The translations under genes and the position numbers were made by a program. A stretch of 64,000 nucleotides of DNA from Macrostomum lignano (taxonomy: Eukaryota), in contig NIVC01002675.1 in assembly GCA_002269645.1 (NCBI GenBank), positions 62,001 through 126,000 of the forward strand. Direction: 5' to 3'. Positions 2,754 through 64,000 of the stretch are shown piece after piece. Under the pieces are notes generated by a model, which did not search any database, was not told the origin of the DNA, and saw only the letters and a program-made list of their open reading frames with translations. The number at the start of each line of letters is the position of its first letter. Position 1 is the first letter of the stretch.

Positions 2754-2821
2754 CTGCGGGGAGAGGCGGAGAGCGCGACTCGAGTCACTATCGCGACTGC
2801 CACTCCTGGGTCTCTAATCGA

Positions 2822-32222: not shown

Positions 32223-33222
32223 TCAGTCAAGTACGCTGTGCGTCAAAGCAGCCAGCGAGTTGGTCAACGAGTCCGAGTCGCCGCCGCCTCCTTCGCAGGC
32301 GCCTGGCGGTGCCGATCCGGAGCTGTGCGGGTCCGGCTTCAGCCGAGAGCCCCGCCGGCTGGCTGCCGTCGCCTCTGCCGCAGTCCGGGCCGCAAAGACG
32401 CGCGTTTTTGCGCGGTCGCGCTTTCCTCCGCCTCCGCTACCGCTGCCACCGCCGCCACCAGACGGCCCCGAATTGAGCAGCGAGGCGGCCACCAGGGCGA
32501 TGGAGTTTGAGAATGACGAATTCACGCTCATGCCATTGAGCTGGCGCGAGCTGCCCGACAGACTCGACAAACCGTCGCGCGCCCCGGCGCCGCCGCTGGG
32601 CTGCCGACCGACAGTTCGCAGCGGGTCGCCGCCGCCGGCTCTGTCCAGCTCCTCCGGCGGCTGCATCGGTGGCGCCTCGTCCAGGCAGGGCGTGACGCAC
32701 TCGGGATTCTCGCGCAGGACAGCCACCAGCTCCGACATGGTTGGGCGCTCTTTCGGCTCGAACTGCCAGCAGCGGGACACGATGGCGTGCAGCACGGGGG
32801 TGGCGCCGGCTGGGAAGCGGGACAGCAGAGTCTCGCCGTGGTTGACCTGCGCCATGACCTGCTGCTGGCTCAGCTCCTCGAACGGGTACTTGCCGAAGGT
32901 GACCAGCTCGTACAGCACAACAGCGTAGGCCCAGACGTCGCTGTGCACGGTGAAGAAGTAGTACTGGATGGCTTCCGGCGGCATCCAGCGGACTGGCACC
33001 ATCTTCTGCGTCTGCGTGCGGTAATAGTCCTTCACGGTGCGGGCCAGCCCGAAGTCCCCGATTTTTACCTGCGCAATTTGGGGCGCGATTGTCGGAGTTG
33101 CCCGTCTGTCTGTCTGTCTCTCTGTGTGTGTGTCTGTCTTTCTGTCTGCCTGTCTGTCTGTCTGTGTGTGTGTCTGTCTTTCTGTCTGCCTGTCTGTCTG
33201 TCTGTCTTTCTGTCTGCCTGCC

Positions 33223-33273
<51 letters not shown>

Positions 33274-33340
33274 GTGTGTCTGTCTTTCTGTCTGCCTGTC
33301 TGTCTGTCTGTGTGTGTGTCTGTCTTTCTGTCTGCCTGCC

Positions 33341-33393
<53 letters not shown>

Positions 33394-36300
33394 GGCCATT
33401 CTCAGACGACAGTACCCAAAGCCAGACCTGGAAGTACTCGTTGATGAGGCAGTTCCGCAGTGCCAGATCCCTGTGCACAAAGTGCCTACTGTGCAGGTAC
33501 TCCACTCCGCACGCGATGTCCAGTGCGTAGCGAGTCAGGGCTTCTGGCGAAGTCTCCGGAGCAGCCGGCATGGATAGAGCCTGGGTGCGCCGCGCCATCA
33601 GGAAGCCCTTCAGGTCGCCATGCAGGCACATCTCCATCAGAATGTAGTAGGGACTGACCTCCGTGCACACGCCTAGCAGTCGGATGACATTCTCGTGCTG
33701 CACGCTGGTCAGGGAAACTGCCTCCTTCAGCAGCTGCACCACCGACTCCTGCTTGTTTTCGTCGTTGGCGACCTGCTCGAGGAAAATTTGCAAGTACAAT
33801 CTGATTGATTTTGAGCTCATAACTAAAAGCGGCAAGATGGCAAATCAGGGTGTCAGGATGGTTTAGAGGACCGATTCTTAATGTGATTTTGAAAGCCGAT
33901 TCTCAAAGGTCACACCCTTTGCCGACAGCTGGCTGGCACGATTTCGTGCCAAGTGCATGAGTGTCAGAATTTCTACCCCCCGTTCCAGACGGCAGCTAGC
34001 TTCACAAGTATACCCGTATGTAACAAAGCCGCTTAACCAAAAGATAATTTGTCTATGGCTGTGGACCAAATGCTATGGCTGCATGTCTTTCATTCATGAG
34101 AAAACCTTACAGGGGAATATGGAAAGGGCACTATTTTCGGCCATAGATTTTTATTGAAATCACTGTCGTGCTCATAATAGTTCTGCCAAGGACCTGCTTC
34201 AGAAATACAGAAACAGTCTTATTATACTATTGGATATTTTAATCCTCTGTCTACCCAAAGCACCAAGCAAATCGCTCCTGAGAATCATTACATGGCGTTA
34301 GACTTTGACGGAGACTCGGAGTGAGCTGGTTCACTGCTGATGATGAGTCAATTGACGGATCCGAAGTTGAAAATCCCCACAGTGGCCTAGAAGAAGGGCA
34401 GGATGAGTCACTTGTAGGAGAACAGTGGCATTTTGTTGAAGATGGCGCTGATGCCAGGCCAGCACCTCTGCCTGAGTTCCTCGGAGTACCAGGAGTCAGG
34501 CCCGATTTGCAGCTTCCTGAGATCGCCGACGGAAACGAGAGTGATTTTATCAAGCTGTATTTGACAGACGGGTTGATGGAGAACATCAAGAACTGGACAA
34601 AGAACCTAACTGTTAGAACCTAACTGACCATGGTAGGATGAGCAACTTTTGTGTTAAAAAAAACAATGAAGTTTTGGCGGCCCAATGCGCACTTCTATTT
34701 ATTCATGATCTGAATTCCCTTTTTTTGTCACCTATTCTACTGTGTTTTTCTGTTCGAATGCAGTTCAATTACACACAGCTCGTTCTATTTATTAATAGTC
34801 AAGACTACTTCATAAAAACTAATGCTTTTTGCGTTAGTTTGTGTTATCAATACAGAAAGCATGATCTACGTTCGTGTTATACTATACTACGTATAAGATA
34901 CAAATGTACTAACTACTTCAAATACTATTATTCGTTTTTAATATACGCAGGTGTGCATTTGGTCCTGGTCCTATAATTCTTGATCTGTGATGATTGCCAT
35001 AGACAGTGCCACCTAACCTATAGGAAAATAAGCAGCTTTCCAACAAAAACGAACGTGGCACGTTTTTGAGCCATGTCAGTCGGCAACGGGGGTATTAAAT
35101 TCTGCAATCTACGATTGCCCTAGACACCAAGATTCGGTTCCGTCAATAACTATGATTACTTTATGGCAAGAAATCGTGCCATCCGTCTTCTGCCGGTTAG
35201 GCCGATTGTCAGGGTGGTTTTGAGGGCCGATTGTCAGTGTGATTTTGAAGGCCGATTGTCAGGGTGGTTTTGAGGGCCGATTGTCAGTGTGATTTTGAAG
35301 GCCGATTGTCAGGGTGGTTTTGAGGGCCGATTGTCAGTGTGATTTTGAAGGCCGATTGTCAGGGTGGTTTTGAGGGCCGATTGTCAGTGTGATTTTGAAG
35401 GCCGATTGTCAGGGTGGTTTTGAGGGCCGATTGTCAGTGTGATTTTGAAGGCCGATTGTCAGGGTGGTTTTGAGGGCCGATTGTCAGTGTGGTTTTGAAG
35501 GCCGATTGTCAGGGTGGTTTTGAGGGCCGATTGTCAGTGTGATTTTGAAGGCCGATTGTCAGGGTGGTTTTGAGGGCCGATTGGCAGGGTTGTTTTGAAG
35601 GCCGATTTTCAAGGTGATTTTGAAGGCCGATTCTAAATGTGGTTTTTAAGGCCGATTCTCAAGGTGATTTTGGAGGCCGATACTCAATGTGATTTCCGAT
35701 TCTCACAGTGATTTTGAAGGCCGATTCTTAATGTGGTTTAAAGGGCCGATTCTTAATGTGGTTTTAGGGCCGATTTCCAAGGTGGTTTAGAGGGCCGATT
35801 CTCCAGATGGCTTTAAGTTTCTGGGTGGTTTTGAAGGCTGATTCTCAAAGGCAGCTTAGAGGACCGATTCTCCAGGTTTTGAAGGCCGATTCTTATAGAT
35901 CGGAGACAGATCAGAGGGGCAACTGCGTGGACCGTCAGGGATATTTTTCAGAGCCTTCAAACGGTTTTAAGGGCAGAACACAATTGTAGCAGAGAGCTCA
36001 GAGGAGCTAAAGTTCACACTTAACGCACCTTGATAACGCAAGAGGTCCACGCGGACACTTCGCCGCTGACCCGGCCAGCCAGATTGACCTCTCCGCCGTA
36101 CACAGTGCCAAAATACCCAGCGCCCATTTTCCTGTTGAGCACGACCAGCGACCTGTCCAGCTCGTACTTGACCAGCTGATCGCGCAGCAGCTGAAACGGC
36201 TGTGCCCTCAGCTGATACTCGCGCTGCCGATAGTGGCGCAGCAGCACGAAGAACAGCAGCATCAGCGCCAGCAGGATGATGAAGAACACCAGGCAGCCCA

Positions 36301-39300
36301 GAGCTACGATGGACTCGGAGCAGCGCATGCCGGTTCTCAATGCCGACAGCAGGCCCTGGTTGCAGCTGTACGGCTCCCTGAGCAGCTGGATGAACAGCTC
36401 ATTCTCTGTGGCATAGCGCACAGTGGCTGTGGGCTTGAAGCGGTGCTTCACCTCCACCCGGCCATTGGGCAGGCGCTGCCAGACGAAGCCGTCAAGAACC
36501 TGCGTCTTCATGAACTGCTCGCCTCTGCTGATCTTCTTTATCGTGCGCAGCTCTTCGAATTTATCCATCCTGACTGAGTCGAAGAAGCTTTTAGTCGTGT
36601 TCTTGAACTGGTTGTAGCGGCGCAGTATGACCTGGGAAACACCAAGTTTGTTAAGTTCGATGGTAATAGTGTTTAGCGTTACAATATCTGTATCTATAGC
36701 TATCTGGGGATCCAGGGTCCAGGAATAAGTCCCGAGGCGATCTGGGGATCCAGGGTCCTGGAATAAGTCCCGAGGCAATCTGGGGATCCAGGGTCCAGGA
36801 ATAAGTCCCGAGGCGATCTGGGGATCCAGGGTCCAGGAATAAGTCCCGAGGAGATCTGGGGATCCAGGGTCCAGGAATAAGTCCCAAAGCTTATCTGGGG
36901 ATCCAGGGTCCCGGAACGAGTCCCGAGGCGATCTAGGATAGATCTCGTAACTCTTGAGGCTACCTGGGGATCCAGAAAAGAGCGCCAGCTATCGTAGGAT
37001 GTAGGGTCTTAAAGAGTAAGATCTGAGGATTCAATTGGGAGATCTAGGGTCCAGAAGAACAAGTACACAGAGTGCTAGCTAGATCAGAGGATCCAGGGTC
37101 CAGAGAACAAGTACACAGGGTGCTAGCTAGATCAGGGGATCCAGGGTCCAGAGAACAAGTACACAGGGTGCTAGCTAGATGAGGGGATCCAGGGTCCAGA
37201 AGAACAAATACACAGAGTGCTAGCTAGATGAGGGGATCCAGGGTCCAGAAGAACAAATACACAGAGTGCTAGCTAGATGAGAGGATCCAGGGTCCAGAAG
37301 AACAAGTACACAGGGTGCTAGCTAGATCAGGGGATCCAGGGTCCAGAGAGCAAGTACACAGGGTGCTAGCTAGATGAGGGGATCCAGGGTCCAGAGAACA
37401 AGTACACAGGGTGCTAGCTGGATGAGGGGATCCAGGGTCCAGAAGAACAAGTACACAGAGTGCTAGCTATAGATCAGGGGATCCAGGGTCCAGAAGAACA
37501 AGTACACAGAGTGCTAGCTATAGATCAGGGGATCCAGGGTCCAGAAGAACAAGTACACAGAGTGCTAGCTATAGATCAGGGGATCCAGGGTCCAGAAGAA
37601 CAAGTACACAGAGTGCTAGCTATAGATCAGGGGATCCAGGGTCCAGAAGAACAAGTACACAGAGTGCTAGCTGTCAGTCCGCAGCCTGTCGCTCACATTG
37701 ATAGCTCCCCGGCCAATATCGTGCCTGCTGTCAATCATTAGAAGCGAGTTGTCGCTAGCAAAGGTGGTGGTTTCCAGAGCCGCCTTAAACCTCGCGGCCA
37801 CGCTCGGGCTGTTGAGATTGTAAACTGCCGACGGCTGGTCCTCCGCTAGCTTAGTGACTGCCCGGGTGACCAGCAGGATAGCCTGCTGAGTATAGTACTG
37901 AAAGTAGTCTACCATCAATGATTTCGACTCAATAACTGGCCTGGCAGCCTCGGTGCCGGGCTTCGTCAGCTCCCTGGGCACCTGGCGAACAATCAGATGA
38001 CCGTCGGCCACTTCGCGCAGGTTGGTCTCTGTGCAGCCGTCCGTGTTGTTGTTGTCCTGCATTGCGCCAGTGTTGGCGCAGAAGACTGTGTAATTGAAAA
38101 TGTTTCTGGCGCTGCGGGTTGGGATAGCGAAAGCAAAATGGAGAGGAAGACTACAGACAGGAATCAGTACTGCTGTTACACATTCTGGAGAAATAGAATC
38201 TAAAAGTACACAGTCTGAAGCCTTCATAGCATAAAATCACACATTCTGAAGGCATCAAACTTTAAAAGTACATATTCTGCAGGCATCAGACTTTAAAGTA
38301 CACATTCTAAAGGCATCATATCCTAAAAGCACACACCTGAAGGCATCATCCTAAAAGTACACATCTGAAGGCATCATATCCAAAAAGTACACATCTGAAG
38401 GCATCATATCCTAAAAGTACACATCTGAAGGCATCATATCCTAAAAGTACACATCTGAAGGCATCATATCCAAAAAGTACACATCATATCCTTTGGTTGC
38501 ACACGATGGCCGAACAAGACAAGCTAAGTTCAGAATAAAATAATAATAAGTTGAAGCGCACCTGTCGCTCAAAATAAACATATAGTTATTCTTTGGGAGC
38601 ATATTATGCTTGTAGGCAGCGCACAGATAAAGGCAGGTGCCACGCCGCAAATAGTCCATTACAAACATCTGGCACCGCTTTTTTTTCGCGTTTTCTAAAT
38701 TATCCTTGGCCTGCAATGCGTGATTTGTAGTTAAAACATTAGACTGAAATTTCACAATATTTCTACTGACATCGCATACTAGTAGTATAAAATGCGTTTA
38801 AAAGTAAGCTTAAGTTGAAATTACTTAACTACAGAATAGTGTAGAGTTAACACACTTGGCTTAACTAGTCAATCAATCAATTAGCCAGGGTTCGGGCACA
38901 GCTGCCACATCTGGCTATCAGGGTTCAGGTGCAACTGCCACACCTGGCTATCAGGGTTCAGGTGCAGCTGCCACATCTGGCTATCAGGGTTCAGGTGCAG
39001 CTGCCACATCTGGCTATCAGGGTTCAGGTGCAGCTGCCACATCTGGCTATCAGGGTTCAGGTGCAGCTGCCACACCTGGCTATCAGGGTTCAGGTGCAGC
39101 TGCCACATCTGGCTATCAGGGTTCAGGTGCAGCTGCCACATCTGGCTATCAGGGTTCAGGCACAGCTGCCACACCTGGCTATCAGGGTTCGGGCACAGCT
39201 GCCACACCTGGCTATCAGGGTTCAGGTGCAGCTGCCACATCTGGCTATCAGGCTTCAGGTGCAGCTGCCACACTTAGCTATCAGGATTCAGGTGCAGCTG

Positions 39301-42300
39301 CCACACCGGCTATCAGGGTTCGGGTAGCCAAATGTATAACATATAAATCACCTGTTTCAGCGTAAGAGACTCCTCACTAACAACGTCCTCAAAGCAGACA
39401 GTGAGCCCGTTCTTCTTGCCCTCGAACTGTTCCCGCCGAAGGAAGAGCTTGCCGCTGGACAGCAGCGCCACGTCGGGCCAATTGTGGCGCTTTAGAAACT
39501 GAGTGACAACTTCGGCATAGGCATCCAGGCTCGGTATAGTGCGGAAGAAGTAGGGGTAGGCGGTGGGATCGTTATAGATTGTAGATTCGACTGTAGGCGA
39601 GATGACCACACTGCGCATCTCCGTGCTGAGCTCGGCAATGGGCTGCACAGTGTCCGAGCAGGTGGCGGCCAGCAGGCCAAGCAGAGGCCCGTTGGCTCGG
39701 CCGCGGCGCTGGCCAGGACAGACAGAGTCGGCAAAGAACTGCAGCGCGTCAGCTTTGTTGCAGTCCAAGCCGCGGGACTCCAGACTGAGCCGCAGGCCGG
39801 CCCGCCGCAGCCTGATTGAATCATTGCGAAGCGCTTCGTACGGCGTGCTGGGCACCGTCGTGGCATTCGGCAGAGGCGCCGCGTCCTCCGGGTTGATTGG
39901 ATCGCCGTTGAGCTGGGCGACAGTCCGCCTGGCCCAGTGCAGAACCTGATTGTCGTACAGCTTGCTGCCGTTCGGCCACATGAGCGCCAGGCGCAGGGGC
40001 TGCAGGTAGGCGGATTCGTTCAACTGCGGGACGCTCCAGTAGCCTTTGGGAGCGGCCGCGGTCGCTGTTTGGTTTCGCTGCTTCAGTAGCTCCTTAAGAG
40101 TAAATCTGAATGTTGGTTGGATCAAAAAAGGTGGTAGAAGAACAAAGACTTGGCAAGGATGCAGACGGTTGGTAGAAGAACAAAGACTTGGCAAGGATGC
40201 AGACGGTTGCCAGAAGGACAAAGACTTGGCAAGGATGCAGACGGTTGGTAGAAGGATAAAGACTTGGCAAGGATGCAGACGGTGGTAGAAGGACAAAGAC
40301 TTGGCAAGGATGCAGACGGTGGTAGAAGGATAAAGACTTGGCAAGGATGCAGACGGTGGTAGAAGGATAAAGACTTGGCAAGGATGCAGACGGTGGTAGA
40401 AGGATAAAGACTTGGCAAGGATGCAGGAATAAGACAGGAACGGTAGCAGTGCGTGTAAAGCTGGCACAAAGACCTAGGCGAACGGCTTACTCGCACAGAC
40501 TGGCGCCGGGAGACAGAGCGGCTGGATCAGGCAAGGAGAAAGAAGTTAGAAAGGCCCGCAGTTCCGGGTCTCTAGCGGCCAGGTTAGTCAACAGCAGCTT
40601 CTTCTGCTGGCTGCCGATGCCGGAGACGTGCGCGTAGCCGCCAGACTCAGTCAGACGACTTGGCAGGGTGGAGCCGCTGTCGCAGGAGTCCTTGAGCCGC
40701 TGGATGTAGGTCGGATTGAGAATGAAGTCGTGCTCCAACGAGTTCAGTGGACAGTGCGGGCGACCTAGCGACGAGTAGATGTAGCTGCAGGGGAGGCATT
40801 GGGGATTGAAGACTTAGCGGCTATGGAGACTGGATCCACCGTTTGGCTAATCAGTGGGTCAGCGCCATCCTGTGGCTAATCAGTGGGTCAGCGCCATTCT
40901 GTAGCTAATCAGTGGGTCAGCGCCATTATGTAGCTAATCAGTGGGTCAGCGCCATTCTGTAGCTAATCAGTGGGTCAGCGCCATTATGTAGCTAATCAGT
41001 GGGTCAGCGCCATCCTGTGGCTAATCAGTGGGTCAGCGACATTCTGTGGCCAATCAGTGGGTCAGCGCCATTCTGTAGCTAATCAGTGGGTCAGCGCCAT
41101 TCTGTGGCTAATCAGTGGGTCAGCGCCATTCTGTGGCTAATTAGCGGGTCAGCGCCATTCTGTGGCTAATCAGTGGTTCAGCGCCCATGCCCACTGGCTA
41201 ATCATTGGGTCAGCGCCCATGCACACTGGCTAACCAGTAGGTCAGCGCCATTCTGTGGCTAATCAGTGGGTCAGCGCCATTCTGTGGCTAATTAGCGGGT
41301 CAGCGCCATTCTGTGGCTAATCAGTGGTTCAGCGCCCATGCCCACTGGCTAATCATTGGGTCAGCGCCCATGCACACTGGCTAACCAGTAGGTCAGCGCC
41401 ATGCTGTGGCTAATCAGTGGGTTAGTGGATAACTGCCACGATCTCAGAAGCGAGTCACCAACCCGTGTTGTTAATAGCATGGTATACACTGTATAGTTGA
41501 ATTAAATGGAATTTGCAACATTCTTGACGCAGAATATGCTTTAGCCGAACCGACAAGATGGTTGGCAGGGAGCAGACAAACACAAAAGAAGTAAAGCGAG
41601 CCTTCAAGTGCAAAAGTTTAGTAACGAAGGCCTGTCTCTGCAAAATACAGCCACATAGACGGGCATCAGTCAAGGACTGCAGAAACCCCAGGCCCATTAT
41701 ATCGCATTCACACATTAGAGGACGAACGAACCGGGTTTTTCTAAAGGAAAGCAGAAATTTTGCTACAAGTTGCAATATCAACCATTGAAATGTAGAACAC
41801 ATATTGAATCAGTTCTGCCTACATTATACACAAGCCACAATCGGACGGAAAGACAAGGATCTCTCACAATCGGACGGAATGGCAAGGATCTCTCACAATC
41901 GGACGGAATGGCAAGGATCTCTCACAATCGGACGGAATGGCAAGGATCTCTCACAATCGGACGGAATGGCAAGGATCTCTCACAATCGGACGGAATGGCA
42001 AGGATCTCTCACAATCGGACGGAATGGCAAGGATCTCTCACAATCGGACGGAATGGCAAGGATCTCTCACAATCGGACGGAATGGCAAGGATCTCTCACA
42101 ATCGGACGGAATGGCAAGGATCTCTCACAATCGGACGGAATGGCAAGGATCTCTCACAATCGGACGGAATGGCAAGGATCTCTCACAATCGGACGGAATG
42201 GCAAGGATCTCTCACAATCGGACGGAATGGCAAGGATCTCTCACAATCGGACGGAATGGCAAGGATCTCTCACAATCGGACGGAATGGCAAGGATCTCTC

Positions 42301-43832
42301 ACAATCGGACGGAATGGCAAGGATCTCTCACAATCGGACGGAATGGCAAGGATCTCTCACAATCGGACGGAATGGCAAGGATCTCTCACAATCGGACGGA
42401 ATGGCAAGGATCTCTCACAATCGGACGGAATGGCAAGGATCTCTCACAATCGGACGGAATGGCAAGGATCTCTCACAATCGGACGGAATGGCAAGGATCT
42501 CTCACAATCGGACGGAATGGCAAGGATCTCTCACAATCGGACGGAATGGCAAGGATCTCTCACAATCGGACGGAATGGCAAGGATCTCTCACAATCGGAC
42601 TGAATGGCAATGATCTCTCTCAAGCCACAGTCGGACCGAAAGCAAGGATCTCTGAGAATTTTTAGGTACTCAGTCTTTTCACTCTCAGAGAACAGTCTTA
42701 GAACGCTAGTCTCAGTCTAACATTTATCGATCTACGCTTGGACCTTTATTGGTTTGTGTTTCAGTCACTTTATAAGCTTGACCCTCTTTCGCTTTAGTGA
42801 AAATAACAATAGAGACCATTCGACGATGTGAAATTTTTAGGTTACAAAACGCCTCCTCACTAAAGCTGATTTGAGAGGCACTCACTGCTGTCTGTCGCGA
42901 TAAAGAAATCCGCTATCAATATAGTGATTGCCCCAGACCGGCTGAGCCAAGTCAAGCCGGATTAGGCAGGCGTAAGGAAATTTGCACGGATAGTCGTAGG
43001 GCAGTATTGTCGTGCTGTCATAGCGAAATATCTCCCTGAGGACAATGCCAAGTACTTCGGCGCCAAGTCCGAGAGCGCCAGGGCCTGGCGCCACGATAGT
43101 GATGGGCACGTCCGCCTCGTCCGCCGTGGAGTTGAACAGGTAGCGGGCGCGGGATGACACGTCTAAAAGGTGCATGTAGGGCGGTGTGGAGTTGGAGACT
43201 GGGTGACCAATGTGAAAGCGGTTGTGACCAATGTGAGTGGTTGGTGACCAAATGTGACACTGGTTAGTGACCAAAATGTGACACTGGTTGGTGACCAATG
43301 TGACACTGGTTGGTGACCAAATGTGACACTGGTTGGTGACCAAATGTGACACTGGTTGGTGACCAAATGTGACACTGTTTAGTGACCAAATGTGACACTG
43401 GTTAGTAAACAAATGTGACACTGGTTGGTGACCAAATGTGACACTGGTTGGTGACCAAATGTGACACTAGATGGTGACCAAATGACACTAGTTAGTGACC
43501 AAATGTGACACTGGTTGGTGACCAAATGTGACACTGTTTAGTGACCAAATGTGACACTGGTTAGTGACCAAATGTGACACTGGTTAGTGACCAAATGTGA
43601 CAGTGGTTGGTGACAAAATGTGACAGTGGTTGGTGACCAAATGTGACAGTGGTTGGTGACAAAATGTGACACTGGTTGGTGACCAATTGTCGAGCTCACA
43701 TGAGTTGATGCGAGAGTCCAGGTGAAAGTTGCAGACAGGCTGCAGAGGCGGCGGCAGTGGCCTGACAGACGGACTGGCGAAAGGCAGCAGCAGCAACAGC
43801 TGTATCAAGAGTATCGCAATAAGCGAACTCAT
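32223..43832 (-). CDS. VKR: Venus kinase receptor-like RTK: signal peptide, N-terminal extension, Venus-flytrap (ANF/GABA-B-like) domain, TM helix, tyrosine kinase; 9 exons, ~1271 aa
   Basis: complement(join 43700-43832, 42886-43162, 40491-40784, 39352-40105, 38562-38710, 37697-38111, 36029-36631, 33428-33772, 32223-33068) = 3816 nt, phases consistent. Signal peptide [20 protein letters not shown]; VFT motifs [42 protein letters not shown]; [26 protein letters not shown]; kinase [61 protein letters not shown]. The exon-6 acceptor could instead be 38105 (same frame). Confidence 0.88.
33103..33393. repeat. (TCTG)n/(TG)n compound microsatellite, VKR intron 8
   Basis: Direct reading; splits the kinase domain between HRD and DFG. 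Confidence 0.96.
33913..35200 (+). mobile_element. piggyBac-like non-autonomous relic in VKR intron 7
   Basis: ORF 34321..34623 has an acidic N-terminus and FLGVPG...[19 protein letters not shown], resembling the start of piggyBac transposases. Inverted motifs: CCCTTTGCCGAC (33915) vs GTCGGCAACGGG (~35079) followed by TTAA at 35095; TGGCACGATTTCGTGCCA (33934) vs TGGCAAGAAATCGTGCCA (35164, 17/18). Left TTAA not intact; boundaries approximate. Confidence 0.6.
35190..35890. repeat. 25-bp satellite family array with an alternating 50-bp dimer, VKR intron 7
   Basis: GCCGATTGTCAGGGTGGTTTTGAGG alternates with GCCGATTGTCAGTGTGATTTTGAAG from about 35200 to 35580. Confidence 0.93.
36700..37670. repeat. 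Two adjacent minisatellites (38-bp, then 49-51-bp) sharing the core GGGGATCCAGGGTCCAG, VKR intron 6
   Basis: Direct tandem copies at 36700-36970 and 37030-37670. Confidence 0.92.
38270..38485. repeat. ~30-bp minisatellite (AGGCATCATATCCTAAAAGTACACATCTGA)n, VKR intron 5
   Basis: Direct tandem copies. Confidence 0.88.
38885..39325. repeat. 33-bp minisatellite (CAGGGTTCAGGTGCAGCTGCCACATCTGGCTAT)n, VKR intron 4
   Basis: Direct tandem copies; explains ORFs 38881..39273 and 38929..39327. Confidence 0.95.
40130..40425. repeat. ~37-bp minisatellite (GAAGGATAAAGACTTGGCAAGGATGCAGACGGTGGTA)n, VKR intron 3
   Basis: Direct tandem copies. Confidence 0.93.
40845..41425. repeat. 29-bp minisatellite (GTGGCTAATCAGTGGGTCAGCGCCATTCT)n, VKR intron 2
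   Basis: Direct tandem copies. Confidence 0.93.
41835..42630. repeat. Near-perfect 29-bp minisatellite (CAATCGGACGGAATGGCAAGGATCTCTCA)n, ~26 copies, VKR intron 2
   Basis: Period 29 (41881/41910); explains ORFs 41770-42665. Confidence 0.97.
43200..43685. repeat. 23-bp minisatellite (GTGACCAAATGTGACACTGGTTG)n, VKR intron 1
   Basis: Direct tandem copies filling almost the whole intron. Confidence 0.95.
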
Positions 43833-45025: not shown

Positions 45026-48000
45026 TTAAAGCAGCGCGGACATCCGCGTCAGTCGAACGCTGCACGGTCGCAGGTGTTCCCGAATCACGTGACCAACAAA
45101 ATTCGGGCCGACCAGGAATCGTTTAGCACAGATCGGACACCTGGAGTTAGTTAGGGCACCGGTGATTCAACAGTTTAGACCTTTGATTTGATTATTATTC
45201 AAGGTCATTGTTGAGAATACTTTGAGAATAGTAAACAGAACACGAACTGCTGGGCACTGAGAGGATCGCTAGCTAGTGTTGCAAATTGAGCAGACAGATT
45301 TGGCCCAATGACTACTCAAGTAGAAAAACGGGAAGCCTTGTTTCTTATACATATCAAAAGATGAACATGAGGTCTGCTTCCTATCAAAAGCAATAACAAT
45401 TTTCTATCTCTGGAGTGTATTTTTTGGAAAACCTAGAATATAAAATTTTCCAAGAAACATACAGTTTCCAGTCCTTCTACTTGAGTAGTCCTTGACTTTG
45501 CCATGACTAGTGCTTTCACACCTTCGACTTGGGATCACTGGATTCGGGACTGGGATCTTTCCACTAGGGATTTCGATATGTCAGGATTTATAATTTGAAT
45601 CTATTCAGGACTTGAACATTGGGGATGCTATGTAGATGTACATTTTGAGTTCCCCAATTATCAGGGAGGTCTGACATGCGCTATTCAATAGTAATGTTAA
45701 GCGCTGAAATCCTGCTGTTCGATTCAATGCAACTCGCCTGTCCATGTCGGCCCCGTGCGCCACCCTCAGGTGGGCCAGCCAGGCCTCGCGGCAGAGGAAT
45801 TCAACGCCTGGTCGGCCCAGCCGGCGGCACCGTCGGCAGGTGAGGCGGTGCCCGCTGACGGCGGCGTGTCTTGTCAGCGACTGCGGCTCGGAAAAGCTCG
45901 CCTGACAGGCGAGGCAGTTGAACCGCTGCAGATTTGACAGGCGCCGCCGATGGTCGAAGTGCAGCTCGCCGCCGCGCAGGCCGACAGAGCGAAGGCCGTG
46001 CCGGCTGCCCAGGTGCCGAAGCAGGTCGGCAACCGAGGGGAAGCCACCGAGACGACAGGCGGCGCCAGCTGCAGCCGCAGGCGGGCAGATCGGGCAGTGC
46101 AGCTTGGCCAGGCGGTCCAGCAGCTCCGCAGGGTGCCGCAGGCGGAGATGGGCGCACAGAGCCTCGGCGTCGGCAAGTCGGCAGCCGCAGTGCCGGCAGC
46201 TCGGCCGAGACTCCGCTAGGCAGCTGGCGCCGCCGCCCCAGGCCAGGTGCAGCGCCATGCCGCTCCTAGTGAGAAATCGGCGCCCACAGCCGGGGCAGCG
46301 CCGGCCGGCGGGCGAGCGGAGCGCCGCCTCGAGCCGGTCTGGCGGCTCCCGGAAGCCGTGGGCGGAGCGCAGGTGATGGGCCAGAGAGCGGAAGGAGCGG
46401 ACGGCGCCCCGGCACAGCTCGCACAGCACAAAAGGCGGCCGGTCTGGCCCGGCTGCGGGTGTGAAAGAGGGGAGTAGGACTCAGGACATGATTTGGGACT
46501 TAGACTTTCACTGGAATCTCAGGATTTGAATTGGGACTGAAGGAATTTCTTTGGGATCTCATGATTTGGGACTGCAGGACTTTCTCTGGGATCTCCGGAT
46601 TCGGGACTGCAGGACTTTCCCTGGGATCTCTGGATTCGGGACTGCAGGACTTTCCCTGGGATCTCTGGATTCGGGACTGCAGGACTTTCCCTGGGATCTC
46701 TGGATTCGGGACTGCAGGACTTTCCCTGGGATCTCTGGATTCGGGACTGCAGGACTTTCCCTGGGATCTCGGGATTTTTATCGGTACTGGAACTTCCTCT
46801 AGGGATCTTAGAATTTGGGAGTTCAGTTAGGACCGCGACTTGGGATCTTGAAATTGAAGTCAAACGAAGATTCTAAGGCTAGGTGATCATGCTTTAACTG
46901 GGATTCAGACTGCAACTTTAAGGTCGAAAGCAGCTGGCTCACCATAGTTCCGCAGGCGCACAGGTTGGGCCGAAAAACTTCGCATTGGCGGCTGCCACCA
47001 CAAATTCTGCCTATCTGCACTAACACTAGCACTATCATTAGCATTAGCACTAGCCACAGCAGCCTGAGACATTACAATTCTCTTCCCATAGAAAGTGCCC
47101 CGCTCCAGTCTACCGTGCATTTCGGTGACGCCAAACAGGTGCAAACTGTCCAGCTGCAGACAGCAGGCAACCGGTTGAGATTCAACAGCGTCGGGCGCCA
47201 GAGGCCGCGACCCCAGGCCGGGACAGGCGTGCCTAAAGAATTCACCGGGCGTGGCGCAGTCGCTGACGCAGAGTTCGCACTGGTAGGCGCCTGGCAGCGC
47301 CGGCGGCAGTCCGGGCAGACGGTGGCCGCTGCGCATGTGCGAACGAAAGGTTTCGGGATCGCGGCAGCTGAACTTGTCCAGGGCGCACCTGGGATTGGGG
47401 CGGTAAGATGAGTTTGCACATGAATAGCAGTATGGTTAGACTTGCAGTTAGACTAGTAAAATACCCGAGATAAACTACCACCTAAAAAAAAGATAAAAAA
47501 GGGGGGGGGGCCGTAGCCCAGCGGTAGCGCAGCTGCTCTGGTGTGCCGCGACCCAGGCTCGATTCCAAGTGCAGCCACATTAATTTGGGGCGGAATTAGA
47601 ATTTCGGCTTGGCTGGCTTGTGCAATTAACGGCCTTGAGAGCCAACCCAAGGCACAGTGAAGTGTACATGCCTAACGATTGATAAAGTTAGGGCCGCTGT
47701 ACACTCCTGTGTGAGTGTGTGCCTGCGTACGTATCCGCGCGCTTGTATGCCTGCTCAGGGGAGTCGGCGGAATGGGCAGCAATGCCTCTCGCCGGTTGTG
47801 TGCCTATGTCGCTTCAAGTGCGCCAGGGTGCACACAACCCCCCTGCCTCTAATAAAAAAATAGACTAGTAAAATACCCGAGATAAACTACCTGATCAATG
47901 GTCAATATAAAGCCTAGCATACATGCGCAACCTTGGGAATCACCCGGCCGTTTCTATTGGCAACACACGCACACATGTAAGTCGCTATTGGCTGAGAGCA

Positions 48001-59600: not shown

Positions 59601-60626
59601 TCAGAGGGGAGAGGAGGCAAATGATGAACAGTAGGAGCCAAGGCAAGCAGACATAGATCGACGGGCCGCTAGGTTACCGGCATTGCCATCAGAGATGTAC
59701 CGCGAAACTGCCGAGCTGCGCCAATCTCCCAGCAGCTTGATGCGGTCCACGCTCAGCCCAGCATTGAAAGCAAACGTCGCTCCACCACGCCGGAGCGAGT
59801 GCGCCGAGAAGCTAGAAGCTTCCAGTCCGGCCTTGCAGAACAGGCGATGCAGGCGGTGGCGAACCCCCCGCTGAGTCAGAGGCCGCCAGGATCGCGGCGC
59901 TGATGAAACTGAGAATATGGGCAGACTGTGAGACGCATCAAAAAGGCGATTCAGCTGCCAGTGATGTCGGAGCGCAGCCACAGGACACAATCTGAGAGCA
60001 GCTGCTGAGCTCGGGCCCATAACCGGGAGCTGGATGGTGTGAATGCGCTCACCGAACTGCACTGTCTTTGAACGGGCTACAAAGATGGTAACACCAGCGC
60101 GGCTGAACTTGACATCAGATATCCTTATCGCGCTCGCCGAGTCACCCGATTTCTTGCGGGCGCACAGATTATCGAGGCGAAGCATGCCGAACCAGCCCGT
60201 GAGCACGAGAGCCCACAGAGCAGCATCTGCCGGATCTGACAGCAGCAGGTGCTGGCGAATGCGCATCAGATGCTCCGGCCGGAGTGGTTGCTTAGTGGCT
60301 GGGGTCCACGACTTGCTTAGGTCCCGTCTGATTCCTTTTAGGATGAGTGGCAGAATTGGAGCTCGCGCGACTTCGTCAAGACCGAGGCAGCGGCAATACC
60401 AGCTCAACGCTTGCAGATGAAGCTGAACACTGTTGAACGAAAGTAGGCGAAGAGAGATGTCGGACAGGTAGAGAACGAGAAGCTCCACCGTGGGCTGCTC
60501 AGGTCGTTCATTTAGCCCTTGACAGAAACGACACCAGGCTCGCCAGACAGACTCGTAGGTCAGCCGTGTCGACTCCGCCAGAGACAACTCGATCAGACGA
60601 GCCGCCCGCCCCCGAAGCCGCCGCAC
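59601..60626 (-). CDS. Tyrosine recombinase of the YR retrotransposon (ORF starts at GTG, no early ATG)
   Basis: N-terminal LAESTRLTYESVWRAWCRFC; catalytic R (GMLRLDN), KT (RSKTVQ), HSLRRGGA, GDWRS and SRYI. Confidence 0.93.
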   Translation of the reverse strand: MRRLRGRAARLIELSLAESTRLTYESVWRAWCRFCQGLNERPEQPTVELLVLYLSDISLRLLSFNSVQLHLQALSWYCRCLGLDEVARAPILPLILKGIRRDLSKSWTPATKQPLRPEHLMRIRQHLLLSDPADAALWALVLTGWFGMLRLDNLCARKKSGDSASAIRISDVKFSRAGVTIFVARSKTVQFGERIHTIQLPVMGPSSAAALRLCPVAALRHHWQLNRLFDASHSLPIFSVSSAPRSWRPLTQRGVRHRLHRLFCKAGLEASSFSAHSLRRGGATFAFNAGLSVDRIKLLGDWRSSAVSRYISDGNAGNLAARRSMSACLGSYCSSFASSPL

Positions 60627-62389
60627 CGCAGGGTCAGGACCTGTAAAAGCAGAAAATGGGAGGCAGCAGAGGCCAGCGCGTGGGAGGCAAATTCAAGCGG
60701 GCACACTTGCACAGTGCCATAAAAACGCATGCAAAAGTTAATGAGGCCACTCCGAGAATGAAGACGCGAAATGGGGTCAGCATAGGTCTGAAACCAGCCC
60801 GGCACATGAAAGAAGCTTAACACAACTTTGTTAGCGAAACAGAAGAGACCAATGGTCTGAAGCAGGCGCAGCAGCTCAGGGTCCTTAGAAGCAGCCTTGT
60901 TGAGGATGAAGACAGCTGGGTCATTGTCAACGTAGCATACAACCTTGCACTGGCTCAGCAGCGGGCGCAGCACCATCAGAGTGAGAAGCGGCACGAGAGC
61001 TTCTTTGTAGTTGATCGGGTACTTGGCAAACTGGCCATTGAAGTCCTTCTCCCAGTCGATGAAGATCCAGTCACAAAAATTGTGGCTGCGGACGATGCAG
61101 CCGCCCGCCTTCTCGGATGAGTCACTCTCCAGCACCCACTCGTTGAGATACTTGGGCCAGAGCTCGCGGCCATTCAGCTTTCGGATAGCCAGGGTCCACC
61201 ACTCCAGCTCGCCACGCAGCGACTCATCCATACGGACGCAGTGCCTAGGATGAGCTAGAGAGTTAACTCTGGAGATAAGGTTGCGCAGGAAACTTCTACC
61301 CACGGGAGGAGCGACCTGGCACCACCAGTTAATCTTGCCACACAGCTTCTGAAGCTCCCGCTTAGTCAACCGAGACTTCAGCTTCATCTGCTGGACGAGG
61401 TTGACAGTCAGATCGATCTTATCATGGGGCAGGCAAAGCAAACCAGAACTCGTGTCGATGTTCACACCGAGGTAGGTGACGGTCTGGGCTGGGGCGCTGC
61501 TCTTCTCCCAGTTGATGTCGAACCCGAGACGTTGGAGAAGGCCAGTTAAAAACTCAAAGGCCTCTTCACACTTGGCTCTACTGTCAAAGGCAAGGCCAAA
61601 GTCGTCCAAATAACCAACGACATTGCTAAAGCCAGACCGCTGCATAATTCGGACAATCGCCTGCGAGATTCTGTGAAAAATGGACACGGAGGCAGCTGCG
61701 CCAAACATCAGCCGGGTGTCAACCAGGTAGCGCGGCGAGTCGGCTCCTTTGAATTTCCATTGTAGACCGGCTGCCGGGTAGCAAGAAGGGTGAATGCCAA
61801 CGGAGCGATAGGCATGCTTGATGTCGACTTTAGCCACAAAGCAGCCAGGACGGAGCAGACGATAAAATTCATCGATAGACTGAAAGCGGATGCGTTCCTG
61901 CTGATGGTAGTGACTGTTGATAGAATTTCCATACGGAGCGCTGGCGTCGTGAATCAGCCGGATTGATGAGCTGCCCTTAGGGATTGCTGCCAGCGGGCTG
62001 ACCTTCGTAGGCTTTGTGGAAGACATCACATAGCGGCCTGTTCTTAGCTCTTCTTTAATTTGCTTATCCACGAGCTCCTGGTGCGCGAGCGCAGAGTTGT
62101 AGTTAGGCTTAAAGCTTTCGCAGAATTTGGTATCATCAGTGATCATAAACCCGGCACTAATACCATTTAAGAGAAACTCGGCATCTCTGTCTTCATCAAG
62201 ATACTTCGACCATTCACAAAAGCGCATGTCACCACAGCTGGATGTAGGAAAATTATCAGGAATAAAATCGCGGATTGATGAACTATTTACAATGGCGGGC
62301 GGGCGGTCATCTAGTTTTTTGACGCTGAAGCGTGCAGATGACCCGGATGGTCCCTTCTGCAGATGACGCAAGCATGCTGAAATTTGCAT
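60593..62389 (-). CDS. Reverse transcriptase - RNase H of the YR retrotransposon, 598 aa
   Basis: RLIHDAS, KVDIKHAYR, LMFG, GYLDDFG, YLGVNID; RNase H residues ESDSS, YKEA, VDND, ADPISR. No stops. Confidence 0.93.
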   Translation of the reverse strand: MQISACLRHLQKGPSGSSARFSVKKLDDRPPAIVNSSSIRDFIPDNFPTSSCGDMRFCEWSKYLDEDRDAEFLLNGISAGFMITDDTKFCESFKPNYNSALAHQELVDKQIKEELRTGRYVMSSTKPTKVSPLAAIPKGSSSIRLIHDASAPYGNSINSHYHQQERIRFQSIDEFYRLLRPGCFVAKVDIKHAYRSVGIHPSCYPAAGLQWKFKGADSPRYLVDTRLMFGAAASVSIFHRISQAIVRIMQRSGFSNVVGYLDDFGLAFDSRAKCEEAFEFLTGLLQRLGFDINWEKSSAPAQTVTYLGVNIDTSSGLLCLPHDKIDLTVNLVQQMKLKSRLTKRELQKLCGKINWWCQVAPPVGRSFLRNLISRVNSLAHPRHCVRMDESLRGELEWWTLAIRKLNGRELWPKYLNEWVLESDSSEKAGGCIVRSHNFCDWIFIDWEKDFNGQFAKYPINYKEALVPLLTLMVLRPLLSQCKVVCYVDNDPAVFILNKAASKDPELLRLLQTIGLFCFANKVVLSFFHVPGWFQTYADPISRLHSRSGLINFCMRFYGTVQVCPLEFASHALASAASHFLLLQVLTLRCGGFGGGRLV

Positions 62390-63317
62390 TCCTCGCCAAA
62401 CTTACAGCCGGTATCGCGGTTGAAGAGCAGGCAGATTTGGCGATTCCTCCTATTCTGTGGCTGCTTTCTACGCTGCAAGTTGCTGTCTATAGCGCTAAGC
62501 CGATTCGGAGCAAGCAGGTGTCGTGAGAGCAACTGGAAAGACTCGTTGTCCCAGTGACGACTGGTTTCATGCTGGAGCCTCCGAAAGCTGTCATCATAGA
62601 GCAGGACATTACTGACGTCAAATCCACTATTCAGCAGTTCGCCTAACTGGCGGTTGTAGGCAAGGTACTCATGCAACCTTGGAGCAGCGCGCGCTTCCCA
62701 GTCAATCATCTCGCCAGATTCGATCAGGGACTGGAGAATTCTCGCATTCGCACTTATCCACTCGCCGATGCTAATCTGCTCCAGAGGCTTCTGTCTGGTA
62801 TTTGTTCCTTTCTTATTGCCAGCGCTGACATTTCCGGAGTCTTCGACGAAGTCAGGTATGAGAAGTGGGCCCCTCTTGGTGGGGTCAGCATCTTGCTCCA
62901 GGAGGGGAATATTCTCCAAGGCAGAATGGGCGGCGCCCCAACTAGCAGAAAAAGCTGGCTTACCATACGTCTTCGTGCCATGGCGTCTGCCGCTGAGCTC
63001 GGCTGTCAATTCCGCTTCCTCCTTTTGGAGCCTCAGTAGCCTGATGCGTTCCTCGGTCGCTTCGATCTCATCGCGCAGGTCCTGACCCTTCGTCGAGCGG
63101 TGGCGGTTGGGGGCGGTGGCTGGGGCTGCGGTTGGCTGTCGGTCTCGCTGTCAGTTGATTCTTCTCGTCTGCTGGTTGAGTCGTCTTGTTCAGGGTCTCT
63201 ACCTTGCAGACTTTTCAGGCGCGCTAACAGAGTTCTCTTGTTACCATTAGTTGGCTGGCCAGCCGCGGAGAGTTGGGCTTTCAATTCTCGGGCTGTAAGT
63301 TTAGCAAGGCTAGCCAT
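62311..63317 (-). CDS. Gag-like ORF1 in two frames: ATG/SAP-domain leader (63317-63033) and Gag body with C-terminal zinc finger (open frame ~63220-62311)
   Basis: LTARELKAQLSAAGQPTNGNKRTLLARL fits the SAP consensus. The body has a coiled coil (LRDEIEATEERIRLLRLQKEEAEL), ISIGEWISANARIL, LLYDDSFR and CLLFNRDTGCKFGEECKFQHACVIC, and is +1 relative to the leader. Confidence 0.75.
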
Positions 63318-64000
63318 CGCGCAAAAAAATTGAGCAGGTGTGCGACACCGCGAGCAGAGCACAAGCTGGGGGTTAAAAGCTAGCCGCCCCGCGACAACCC
63401 CCCCAACGCAGACGCCACCCCGCCACCCCTAACACACTTTGTACGCGGCCTACGGCCGCCCACAAAGCACACTTATAATAATTAACCATAATGGAAAACT
63501 GCAAGTCATTATGAATATAAGCATGCAAGCAAAAGTTGCTACCGTACGTCAGGCGACCTGATTAATGCAAAATAAATATATAAATAAAATTTGATAACTT
63601 TTATTTGAGGAATACTAAAGCTTGAACGATGAAAAAAATTAAATAAAAACAAGTTTCATACACACTACCATACTAGGTAACTAGATCTGCGAAGCTGTAG
63701 AATCGTACAGGCTTACAAATTTAAATAATTAATTATATTATTATAACAACAAATTTCATACTATGAATAGCAGACTTATTAAAGCATAAATCTCAACAGT
63801 AGGCAAAAATAAATATGGTTCAAATTAATTTGGGTGCATGCCGCAGCTTCAGGCAGAGGCAAGCAAAGTTAGATCGAGGTGAAACAAATAAGAATTATTG
63901 CTATTAAAGCAGTTAAAGCAGCAAACAGGAGCGATGAAAGTTAAAGAATTAAAAAAGCTAAAAACTGATAAGCGCGAGATGACAAATCTGCAATTAATGC

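What the first reader, a model, noticed from the sequence alone, without database searches (positions are those of the whole stretch)
60640..63317. Candidate splicing-based expression system: one SAP leader exon joined to the YR, Gag or RT ORFs of the retroelement
Seen (minus strand): ATG at 63317, then 38 codons + 1 nt, then CAAG|GTAGAG (exon end 63203, phase 1), similar to the host donor GAG|GTAGGG in the IF gene. Just 14 nt upstream of the YR ORF, which has no start ATG, is a textbook acceptor CCCATTTTCTGCTTTTACAG|G (60640), also phase 1. Joining them gives ...LKSLQ-G-PDPAVRRLRGRAARLIEL..., a 384-aa SAP-YR fusion. The same donor restores the +1-shifted Gag through AGs at 63147 or 63135 (55- or 67-nt introns, CTGAC branch-like motif, poor pyrimidine tract) and reaches the RT frame via AAATTTCAG| at 62376. 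Known: DIRS-group ORFs overlap and how the downstream ORFs are translated is poorly understood. Inference: alternative splicing could give all three proteins a shared DNA-binding leader. I am not aware of this being described but could not search. The YR acceptor is strong; the Gag and RT acceptors are weak and could match phase by chance.
Basis: partly seen in the sequence, partly recalled or inferred. Interest (0 to 1): 0.8.

Follow-up and report, generated by a model that had tools for sequence, protein, structure and literature searches.

The report
Spliced Gag–recombinase mRNA in a retrotransposon

Summary
The element (minus strand, about 63475-59500) is a Ngaro/DIRS-type retrotransposon with the order SAP-Gag, RT/RNase H, tyrosine recombinase (YR).

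**Confirmed:**
- ATG at 63317 and a SAP domain.
- A YR frame with no ATG.
- A strong acceptor at 60641|60640, the best of 259 sense-strand AGs.
- The in-frame 384-aa SAP-YR join.

**Refuted or weakened:**
- The Gag "acceptors" at 63147/63135 give the wrong frame, with stops after 64/60 aa.
- Relatives have one continuous SAP-Gag ORF, so the offset is a lesion of this copy.
- RT is reached through a conserved A_AAA_AAC -1 frameshift site (62320-62314).

**What is there instead:** a family-conserved donor in the Gag frame, TATG|GTAAGC (62964|62963, rank 1 of 216).
- Across about 80 related loci, the best Gag donor is phase 1 in 56/67.
- The pre-YR acceptor is phase 1 in 48/54, whatever the RT/YR frame relation.
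- Four RefSeq gene models (limpet, acorn worm, two amphioxus) contain exactly this phase-1 intron, which spans the RT region (and the Gag core where checked).

No RNA data were seen. I found no description in the searchable literature.

The parts
63318..63475 (-). 5' terminal/untranslated region, with a conserved hairpin (CTTTGTGG-GCGGCC...GGCCGC-GTACAAAG)
   Evidence: Similarity to the 5' end of relative L001 starts at TAAGTGT(G/A)CTTTGTGGGCGGCC. The hairpin folds at -14 kcal/mol, z = -5.2 in the window and z = -1.8 in L001.
63033..63317 (-). ORF from ATG 63317 carrying the SAP domain (residues 4-36, nt 63308-63210). In this copy it ends prematurely at the stop 63035-63033.
   Evidence: Pfam SAP 26 bits against a cutoff of 23.9.
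63197..63206 (-).
   Evidence: PWM 5.5, rank 7 of 216. No GT at the homologous place in L001.
63085..63150 (-). Zone holding the frame lesion between SAP and the rest of Gag (net -1, for example a 1-nt deletion), most likely within 63115-63085, between the PPPP and GQDLRDEI stretches
   Evidence: The SAP frame and the Gag frame are both open only here. Relatives P0010/L001 and P0134 read straight through as a continuous SAP-coiled coil-Gag ORF.
62311..63150 (-). Gag-frame ORF: coiled coil, Gag core (PLLIPDFV...), zinc knuckle (62433-62338), stop TAG at 62313-62311
   Evidence: 45% identity and 99% coverage to the 313-aa SAP-Gag protein P0010.
62958..62966 (-). Family-conserved 5' splice site ATG|GTAAGC: exon 1 ends at 62964 (first base of a Gly codon, phase 1 in the Gag frame), intron starts with GT at 62963-62962
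   Evidence: PWM 9.2, rank 1 of 216 sense-strand GTs. Same position as L001 CAATG|GTGAGT, 18 residues after LRL(Q/R)KE. Phase-1 donors occur in 56 of 67 relatives, a median of 207 codons before the Gag stop.
60641..62963 (-). Predicted 2323-nt phase-1 intron, containing the Gag core and all of RT/RNase H
   Evidence: Inferred from the donor and acceptor. The same architecture is annotated in four RefSeq gene models, with introns of 2248-3291 nt containing RT.
62314..62320 (-). -1 ribosomal frameshift heptamer A_AAA_AAC in the Gag frame, immediately before the Gag stop; it leads into the RT frame (..KKLDDRPP..)
   Evidence: The identical heptamer plus stop occurs in L001 and L002, and a canonical heptamer is present in 21 of 23 relatives whose RT is in the -1 frame.
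60593..62320 (-). RT / RNase H coding region; stop TGA at 60595-60593; no methyltransferase, protease or DDE integrase domain
   Evidence: Pfam RVT_1 1e-13, with weak RVT_thumb and RT_RNaseH matches; 126 homologues.
62365..62395 (-).
   Evidence: It is in frame, but its purine-rich upstream run is not a pyrimidine tract, and its sequence is explained by the conserved CKFQHAC (L001 has AAGTTCCAG). RT has a conserved frameshift route instead.
60641..60660 (-). Conserved 3' splice site: pyrimidine tract plus CAG (CCCATTTTCTGCTTTTACAG)
   Evidence: Rank 1 of 259 sense-strand AGs. The homologous site is phase 1 in 48 of 54 relatives, 23-74 nt (median 57.5) upstream of the conserved YR domain, whatever the RT/YR frame relation.
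59601..60640 (-). Exon 2: tyrosine recombinase coding sequence, beginning with the last two bases of a Gly codon; no ATG; stop at 59603-59601
   Evidence: Pfam Phage_integrase 27.4 bits against a cutoff of 27.1; 8434 homologues at E <= 0.001.

Best explanation
The window holds one copy of a Ngaro/DIRS-type tyrosine-recombinase retrotransposon. Its family appears to express three proteins from one transcript by three routes.

(a) Gag is translated from the first AUG as one ORF: SAP domain, linker, coiled coil, Gag core, zinc knuckle.

(b) Gag-RT/RNase H is made by -1 ribosomal frameshifting at A_AAA_AAC, just before the Gag stop.

(c) The recombinase has no start codon of its own. This removes the Gag core and all of RT/RH (2323 nt). 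The product would be a fusion of about 464 aa: SAP, coiled coil, YR.

Shown here:
- The sequence signals, and their rank within the element.
- Their conservation of position and phase across relatives.
- The continuous SAP-Gag ORF in relatives.
- The identical intron in four RefSeq gene models from three phyla.

Inferred:
- That the intron is actually spliced.
- That the shared N-terminus serves DNA or chromatin binding (SAP), or co-assembly with Gag through the coiled coil.

This particular copy carries a net -1 frame lesion between SAP and the coiled coil (63150-63085). As it stands, it could make neither full Gag nor the canonical fusion from its AUG, unless the lesion is an assembly error.
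For: In the window, the conserved donor ranks 1 of 216 GTs and the acceptor 1 of 259 AGs. Both are phase 1 in their own frames, and the join is open to the YR stop.

The donor is positionally homologous to L001 CAATG|GTGAGT. The acceptor is homologous to those of L002 and L083.

Across 80 loci fetched with the RT alignment, plus L001 and L002 (RT 32-45% identical):
- The pre-YR acceptor is phase 1 in 48/54 (p = 3e-17). The best acceptors inside RT as a control split 30/26/27 across the three phases.
- The best in-Gag donor is phase 1 in 56/67 (p = 9e-13 even against the RT-internal control rate of 34/83).
- That donor is the best GT of the whole contig in 37/67, and lies a median of 207 codons before the Gag stop (IQR 195-215).
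- Donor and acceptor phases agree in 36/44 (p = 5e-11; 29/37 after dereplication).

The YR frame relative to RT is +1 in 25 loci, -1 in 22 and 0 in 7. Of the 48 phase-1 loci, 22 have no ATG anywhere upstream of the YR domain in its frame. No single recoding mechanism fits that spread.

RefSeq models map onto their genomes as two exons with one GT..AG phase-1 intron of 2248-3291 nt that contains RT (with a Gag-core match too in Patella). The models are XP_050388701.2 (Patella vulgata), XP_077986280.1 (Glandiceps talaboti), XP_078682739.1 (Branchiostoma hybrid, the same 503-aa length at 4 loci) and XP_019639177.1 (B. belcheri). The N-terminal exon of the Patella model is homologous to Gag N-termini (E = 2e-7).

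The SAP-Gag ORF is continuous in P0010/L001 and in the Macrostomum protein P0134.

The frameshift heptamer is conserved.
Against: - No RNA evidence of any kind was available: no junction reads and no spliced contig. Exact-protein look-ups of the fusion proteins found only genome records.
- RefSeq models are automatic predictions, and their RNA support could not be inspected.
- The donor and acceptor were picked with simple consensus scores, so their consensus-likeness is partly circular. Phase and position are not.
- The relatives are phylogenetically related, so the counts are not independent events.
- In a few relatives YR is fused in frame to RT (L080, P0019) or separated from it by a single stop (L011, L012, L030, L071); L039 and L068 are also in the same frame but a little further apart. 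In these, an RT-YR polyprotein is also possible.
- In this copy, the frame lesion makes the canonical product untranslatable from the AUG.
- MFE folding found no stimulatory hairpin downstream of the slippery site (z = +1.76).
Confidence: 0.72

Rival explanations
1. One reading: a short SAP-only leader exon ending at 63203 is alternatively spliced to the YR (60640), Gag (63147/63135) and RT (62376) ORFs.
For: The 63203 donor exists, is phase 1, and joins in frame to YR (384 aa) and to the RT frame. In this frameshifted copy it is the only donor that links the AUG to YR in frame.
Against: The Gag joins are out of frame, with stops at aa 64 and 60. The donor is weak (PWM 5.5, rank 7 of 216) and absent at the homologous site in L001. 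Relatives have a continuous SAP-Gag ORF. Relatives place the donor after the coiled coil, about 207 codons before the Gag stop. RT has a conserved -1 frameshift site, and the 62376 site is zinc-knuckle coding sequence with no pyrimidine tract.
Confidence: 0.07
2. YR is translated from the unspliced RNA: by -1 frameshifting from the RT frame within the 97-nt overlap, by termination-reinitiation, or by non-AUG initiation (for example GTG at 60626). On this view the splice-like motifs are by-products of coding for the conserved RT C-terminus (FLxLQ).
For: YR is -1 relative to RT here, in L002 and in L083. The pyrimidine tract encodes the conserved ..FL(L/S)LQ. Published descriptions speak only of overlapping or frameshifted YR ORFs (PMC3783388, PMC3266345).
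Against: There is no X_XXY_YYZ heptamer in the RT frame within the overlap. Across relatives the YR/RT frame relation is +1, -1 or 0 in 25/22/7 loci, yet the acceptor keeps phase 1 relative to YR. This view does not explain the matching phase-1 donor at a fixed place in Gag, nor the RefSeq two-exon models.
Confidence: 0.13
3. Nothing functional: this is a dead single copy, and the GT/AG matches and the gene models are coincidences or prediction artefacts.
For: This copy has a frame lesion. No terminal repeats were detectable. There is no second copy in the window. RefSeq models are automatic.
Against: The Gag, RT and YR frames are otherwise fully open. Position and phase of both sites are conserved in dozens of elements at 32-45% RT identity, against flat controls. 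That is hard to obtain without selection.
Confidence: 0.05

Closest known systems
Ngaro / DIRS-order tyrosine-recombinase retrotransposons (Goodwin & Poulter; reviews PMC3266345, PMC3783388, PMC6681497)
   Same: Gag-like ORF1, RT/RNase H, a phage-integrase-type YR at the 3' end, no protease or DDE integrase, no methyltransferase (Ngaro-like), and a YR ORF that overlaps or is frameshifted relative to RT.
   Different: The descriptions I could read attribute YR expression only to 'overlapping/frameshifted ORFs' and contain no mention of splicing or introns. Here a conserved donor/acceptor pair and a Gag-N-YR fusion are proposed. Split direct repeats were not found in this copy.
Retroviral spliced subgenomic mRNAs, for example avian leukosis/Rous sarcoma virus env mRNA, in which the first gag codons are spliced onto env (from my own knowledge)
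   Same: One transcript; unspliced RNA serves for Gag and Gag-Pol by recoding; a 5' donor inside gag joined to an acceptor before the 3' ORF makes the downstream protein start with Gag residues.
   Different: Here about 118 codons are donated (124-173 in the RefSeq relatives), comprising whole domains (SAP plus coiled coil), and the downstream gene is the integration enzyme rather than an envelope protein. In retroviruses integrase is part of Pol.
Foamy-virus Pol, errantivirus (gypsy) env and Drosophila copia: retroelement proteins made from spliced RNAs (from my own knowledge)
   Same: Splicing is used to set the dosage of a retroelement protein independently of Gag.
   Different: These are different element classes (LTR/DDE integrase), and none has a Gag-enzyme fusion through a phase-matched intron.
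Gag-Pol -1 frameshifting at A_AAA_AAC (as in MMTV, HTLV and BLV; from my own knowledge)
   Same: The same heptamer in the correct frame just upstream of the Gag stop, conserved in relatives.
   Different: No downstream stimulatory structure could be demonstrated here; pseudoknots were not testable.

Membership tests
DIRS order (tyrosine-recombinase retrotransposons) | Reverse transcriptase plus RNase H related to Ty3/gypsy-type RT | tested here: met
   Pfam RVT_1 E = 1e-13, with weak RT_RNaseH and RVT_thumb matches; 126 RT homologues.
DIRS order (tyrosine-recombinase retrotransposons) | Tyrosine recombinase in place of a DDE integrase; no protease | tested here: met
   Phage_integrase 27.4 bits against a cutoff of 27.1, with the HSLRRGGAT...GDW...Y motifs visible. 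No protease or rve hit in any ORF.
Ngaro superfamily | Order Gag - RT/RH - YR with no methyltransferase domain | tested here: met
   ORF order. Only about 85 residues follow RNase H, and there is no MT hit.
Ngaro superfamily | Split direct repeats (A1 ... B1-A2-B2) | tested here: inconclusive
   No repeat between the 5' region and the 3' region. The best local alignment of the flanks is no better than shuffles (score 22 against a mean of 23). Only about 520 nt lie upstream of the element before the window ends.
DIRS1-like superfamily | Inverted terminal repeats plus an internal complementary region, and an MT domain | tested here: not met
   No MT domain and no terminal inverted repeats.
Retroelement with a spliced subgenomic mRNA | Canonical GT donor and pyrimidine-tract AG acceptor on the sense strand, phase-compatible with the ORFs joined | tested here: met
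   62964|62963 and 60641|60640 rank 1 of 216 and 1 of 259, both phase 1. Conserved in relatives.
Retroelement with a spliced subgenomic mRNA | Spliced RNA or fusion protein actually observed | not testable with these tools
   Only automatic RefSeq gene models with this intron were found. No transcript contig carrying the fusion was found.
-1 programmed ribosomal frameshifting (Gag-Pol type) | X_XXY_YYZ heptamer in the upstream frame within the overlap | tested here: met
   A_AAA_AAC at 62320-62314. The same heptamer is in L001 and L002, and a canonical heptamer is present in 21 of 23 relatives with RT in the -1 frame.
-1 programmed ribosomal frameshifting (Gag-Pol type) | Downstream stimulatory RNA structure | tested here: inconclusive
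   The MFE of the 108 nt from the site is weaker than shuffles (z = +1.76). Pseudoknots are not modelled.

The most novel reading that the evidence does not exclude
A conserved phase-1 spliceosomal intron, spanning the Gag core and the whole RT/RNase H gene, is the general way in which Ngaro/DIRS-type retrotransposons of animals (flatworm-like, mollusc, hemichordate and cephalochordate elements) express their recombinase: as a fusion to the N-terminal DNA-binding/oligomerisation module of Gag. On this reading, the 'overlapping, frameshifted, ATG-less YR ORF' long noted for these elements is a splicing signature, and the mechanism has not been described before.
Probability: 0.45. Interest if true: 0.8.

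Novelty: new variant of a known kind. Interest (0 to 1): 0.68.

Why it matters
How tyrosine-recombinase retrotransposons translate their downstream ORFs has been left at 'overlapping or frameshifted ORFs'. A conserved Gag-to-YR splice gives a concrete, testable answer.

- It predicts the true recombinase protein: about 450-500 aa carrying a Gag N-terminal module (SAP plus coiled coil in this subfamily). That matters for any biochemical or structural work on these enzymes.
- It explains why the YR frame is uncorrelated with the RT frame.
- It shows these elements using the retroviral combination of recoding for Gag-Pol and splicing for the 3' gene.
- It gives annotators a rule for telling real TE-encoded Gag-N-YR transcripts from supposed host 'xerD homolog' genes in RefSeq.

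Tried and rejected
I translated both joins; they are out of frame. The AGs that would restore Gag (introns of 59, 77, 83 or 143 nt) have no pyrimidine tract.
- **A second copy in the window.** None was found by blastn or tblastn.
- **Terminal repeats.** None were found.
- **A short frame-correcting intron inside the RT C-terminus ending at the same acceptor.** By my own count on the sequence, the upstream GTs give introns of 72, 66 and 64 nt, none of them 2 mod 3. Rejected.
- **-1 frameshifting from RT into YR.** There is no slippery heptamer in frame.
- **Programmed frameshifting from SAP into Gag.** By inspection of the sequence I saw no canonical heptamer in the overlap, and relatives are continuous. 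I treat the offset as a lesion.
It returned only YR-only hits.
- **Direct evidence for spliced transcripts.** Exact-protein look-ups of four fusion proteins found only genome records.
- **A hairpin downstream of the slippery site.** Not supported.
- **Literature.** Four full-text searches and eight papers checked for these terms found no natural splicing reported for DIRS, Ngaro or PAT elements. The original Ngaro paper (doi 10.1093/molbev/msh072) is not held, so an earlier description in subscription literature cannot be excluded.
Full report
**What is in the window.** On the minus strand, about 63475-59500, lies one GC-rich element set in AT-rich DNA. Three-frame translation and Pfam give the following:
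- An ORF from ATG 63317 with a SAP domain (26 bits, cutoff 23.9).
- A Gag-like frame open from 63150 to the stop at 62311, with a coiled coil, a core and a CCCH/CCHC-type knuckle.
- An RT/RNase H frame ending at 60593.
- A tyrosine-recombinase (YR) frame open from about 60695 to the stop at 59601, with no ATG.

Each frame is -1 relative to the one before. There is no protease, DDE integrase or methyltransferase. This is a Ngaro-like member of the DIRS order. I found no terminal repeats and no second copy in the window.

**Checking the observation.** The coordinates hold:
- ATG 63317, then 38 codons + 1 nt.
- CAAG|GTAGAG, with exon end 63203.
- CCCATTTTCTGCTTTTACAG|G, with exon start 60640.
- An open 384-aa SAP-YR join.
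- An in-frame join to 62376 for RT.

The Gag part is arithmetically wrong. Gag is +2/-1 relative to SAP, so only introns of length 2 mod 3 restore it. The proposed 55- and 67-nt introns are 1 mod 3, enter the third frame, and stop after 64 and 60 residues.

**SAP is the N-terminus of Gag.**
- A protein search with a frame-corrected SAP+Gag query found P0010. This is a single 313-aa ORF on a Logan contig (L001), 45% identical over 99% of the query, with a Pfam SAP domain (38.9 bits).
- A Macrostomum lignano protein named 'SAP domain-containing protein' (P0134) also runs SAP, coiled coil and Gag in one frame.
- The window's offset, confined to 63150-63085 and probably 63115-63085, is therefore a lesion of this copy or an assembly error.

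**RT does not need splicing.**
- In the Gag frame, just before the stop, the window reads TC A_AAA_AAC TAG (heptamer at 62320-62314). Slipping -1 gives ..KKLDDRPP.., which is the RT frame.
- L001 and L002 have the same heptamer plus stop.
- Of 49 relatives with a readable junction, 23 have RT in -1, and 21 of those carry a canonical heptamer in frame, mostly AAAAAAC. Another 20 have a single in-frame stop, as in readthrough.
- MFE folding gave no stimulatory hairpin, so that part of the frameshift signal remains unproven.

**The acceptor is real and ancient.**
- The closest RT relative, L002 (44% identity), also has YR at -1, no ATG, and TTCCTTTCTTTGCAG|A at the same place. L083 is the same.
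- I fetched 80 further loci with an RT alignment (RT 32-45% identical).
- In 54 loci with both the RT C-terminus and the YR N-terminus, the YR frame is +1, -1 or 0 relative to RT in 25, 22 and 7.
- Yet the best pyrimidine-tract AG in the 120 nt before the YR domain is in phase 1 relative to YR in 48 of 54. It lies 23-74 nt (median 57.5) upstream of the conserved domain.
- It is the best or second-best acceptor of the whole contig in 29 of 54, and rank 1 of 259 in the window.
- The best acceptors inside RT, used as a control, split 30/26/27 over the three phases.
- Of the 48 phase-1 loci, 22 have no ATG anywhere upstream in the YR frame.

**The matching donor is elsewhere.**
- In 56 of 67 loci the best GT donor inside the Gag ORF is in phase 1. 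The RT-internal control gives 34 of 83, so p = 9e-13.
- That donor is the best donor of the entire contig in 37 of 67.
- It lies a median of 207 codons before the Gag stop (IQR 195-215), just before the Gag core.
- Donor and acceptor phases agree in 36 of 44 loci, or 29 of 37 after dereplication.
- In the window this donor is TATG|GTAAGC, with exon end 62964, in the Gag frame. It scores 9.2 and ranks 1 of 216.
- The conserved donor is at exactly the same position as L001 CAATG|GTGAGT, 18 residues after LRL(Q/R)KE.
- Joining 62964 to 60640 gives ...GTKTY-G-PDPAVRRL..., open to the YR stop.

**Independent support from gene models.**
- An exhaustive search with the window's YR returned, among ordinary YR-only ORFs of about 320 aa, proteins of 400-550 aa with an N-terminal extension.
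- These are NCBI RefSeq models from Patella vulgata, Glandiceps talaboti, Ptychodera flava and several Branchiostoma genomes. One 503-aa Branchiostoma model recurs at 4 loci within a single 90%-identity cluster.
- The N-terminal extension of the Patella model is homologous to Gag N-termini (E = 2e-7), and so is that of the B. belcheri model (E about 1e-4). The other extensions gave no match.
- I mapped four models onto their genomes. Each has exactly two exons and one phase-1 GT..AG intron of 2248, 3097, 3291 or 2833 nt.
- The four donors are CAA|GTATGT, AAG|GTAAGC, CAG|GTAATG and AAG|GTAAGG, each paired with a pyrimidine-rich acceptor.
- The intron contains RT in all four, and a Gag-core match as well in Patella.
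- Exon 1 is 124-173 codons.
- Two of these elements have RT only about 25% identical to the window's, so the arrangement extends well beyond the window's subfamily.

**Mechanism proposed.** The unspliced RNA gives Gag, and gives Gag-RT/RH by -1 frameshifting. A spliced RNA gives a fusion of the Gag N-terminal module to YR, about 464 aa here once the lesion is corrected.
- *Shown:* the signals, their phases and conservation, and the gene models.
- *Inferred:* that splicing occurs, and that SAP (DNA/chromatin binding) and the coiled coil (association with Gag) are what the recombinase gains.

Exon 1 differs between subfamilies. It is SAP here and in L001, and a weak SAM-like match below the Pfam cutoff in L004.

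As sequenced, this copy cannot translate Gag or the canonical fusion from its AUG. In this copy the 63203 donor would link the AUG to YR in frame, but that has a 1-in-3 prior and no comparative support.

**Novelty.** Four full-text searches and eight papers on DIRS, Ngaro, PAT, VIPER and Crypton elements mention only overlapping or frameshifted YR ORFs. The only splicing they mention is of artificial marker introns. The founding Ngaro and DIRS papers are not in the library, so a prior description cannot be ruled out. Splicing to express a 3' gene is well known for retroviruses and errantiviruses. I therefore class this as a new variant of a known kind.

**Limits.**
- There is no RNA-level evidence.
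- The splice-site scores are simple consensus matrices.
- The relatives are not independent samples.
- The host and the family's other copies could not be examined.

Noticed in passing
window 62314-62320 (minus strand); L001 1145-1151; L002 173-179: A conserved A_AAA_AAC heptamer sits directly before the Gag stop and leads into the RT frame. Of 23 relatives with RT in the -1 frame, 21 have a canonical slippery heptamer, and 20 other relatives have Gag and RT in one frame separated by a single stop codon (readthrough type).
   Followed up: partly
window 63436-63468 (minus strand); L001 about 26-56: A conserved 5'-terminal hairpin (CTTTGTGG-GCGGCC-GTA-GGCCGC-GTACAAAG). It folds at -14 kcal/mol, z = -5.2 in the window, with a weaker equivalent in L001 (z = -1.8). 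It could be a recombination or priming signal.
   Followed up: partly
L031 1-576 and L034 388-984: In these two related contigs a YR coding segment lies upstream of Gag on the same strand. This suggests tandem copies or circularly permuted (circle-junction) sequences.
   Followed up: no
L089 (Branchiostoma belcheri KV411955.1) 1-10282: The element with the Gag-N-YR gene model sits, on the opposite strand, inside an intron of a Laminin-G/EGF/cadherin-type host gene. RefSeq also calls a separate 309-aa gene inside the element's intron.
   Followed up: no
P0134 (UniRef A0A1I8G0Z6, Macrostomum lignano): This 758-aa gene model runs SAP, Gag and the first ~100 residues of RT, then jumps directly into YR at the usual place. 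It is probably a mis-joined model that still uses the conserved YR acceptor. It is the only named SAP-Gag relative recovered, and a Macrostomum protein (P0014) is also the second-best RT hit, which hints at a flatworm-like lineage for the family.
   Followed up: partly
window 464-907, 2788-3555, 7453-8713, 16647-17513, 20187-21153, 30475-31293, 33037-33577, 38881-39327, 41770-42665: Very dense minisatellite arrays, seen as long repetitive ORFs in several frames, with extreme local GC skew (for example -0.88 at 18001-19000).
   Followed up: no
window 20993-21433 (-), 26734-27394 (-), 32223-33835 (-), 45605-46429 (-): By eye from the ORF translations: host or other-TE coding pieces, namely an intermediate-filament/lamin-type rod exon (ending ...LLEGEEIR|GTGAGG), a LINE-like RT fragment, protein-kinase exons resembling a receptor tyrosine kinase, and a Cys/His-rich, zinc-finger-like ORF.
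   Followed up: no
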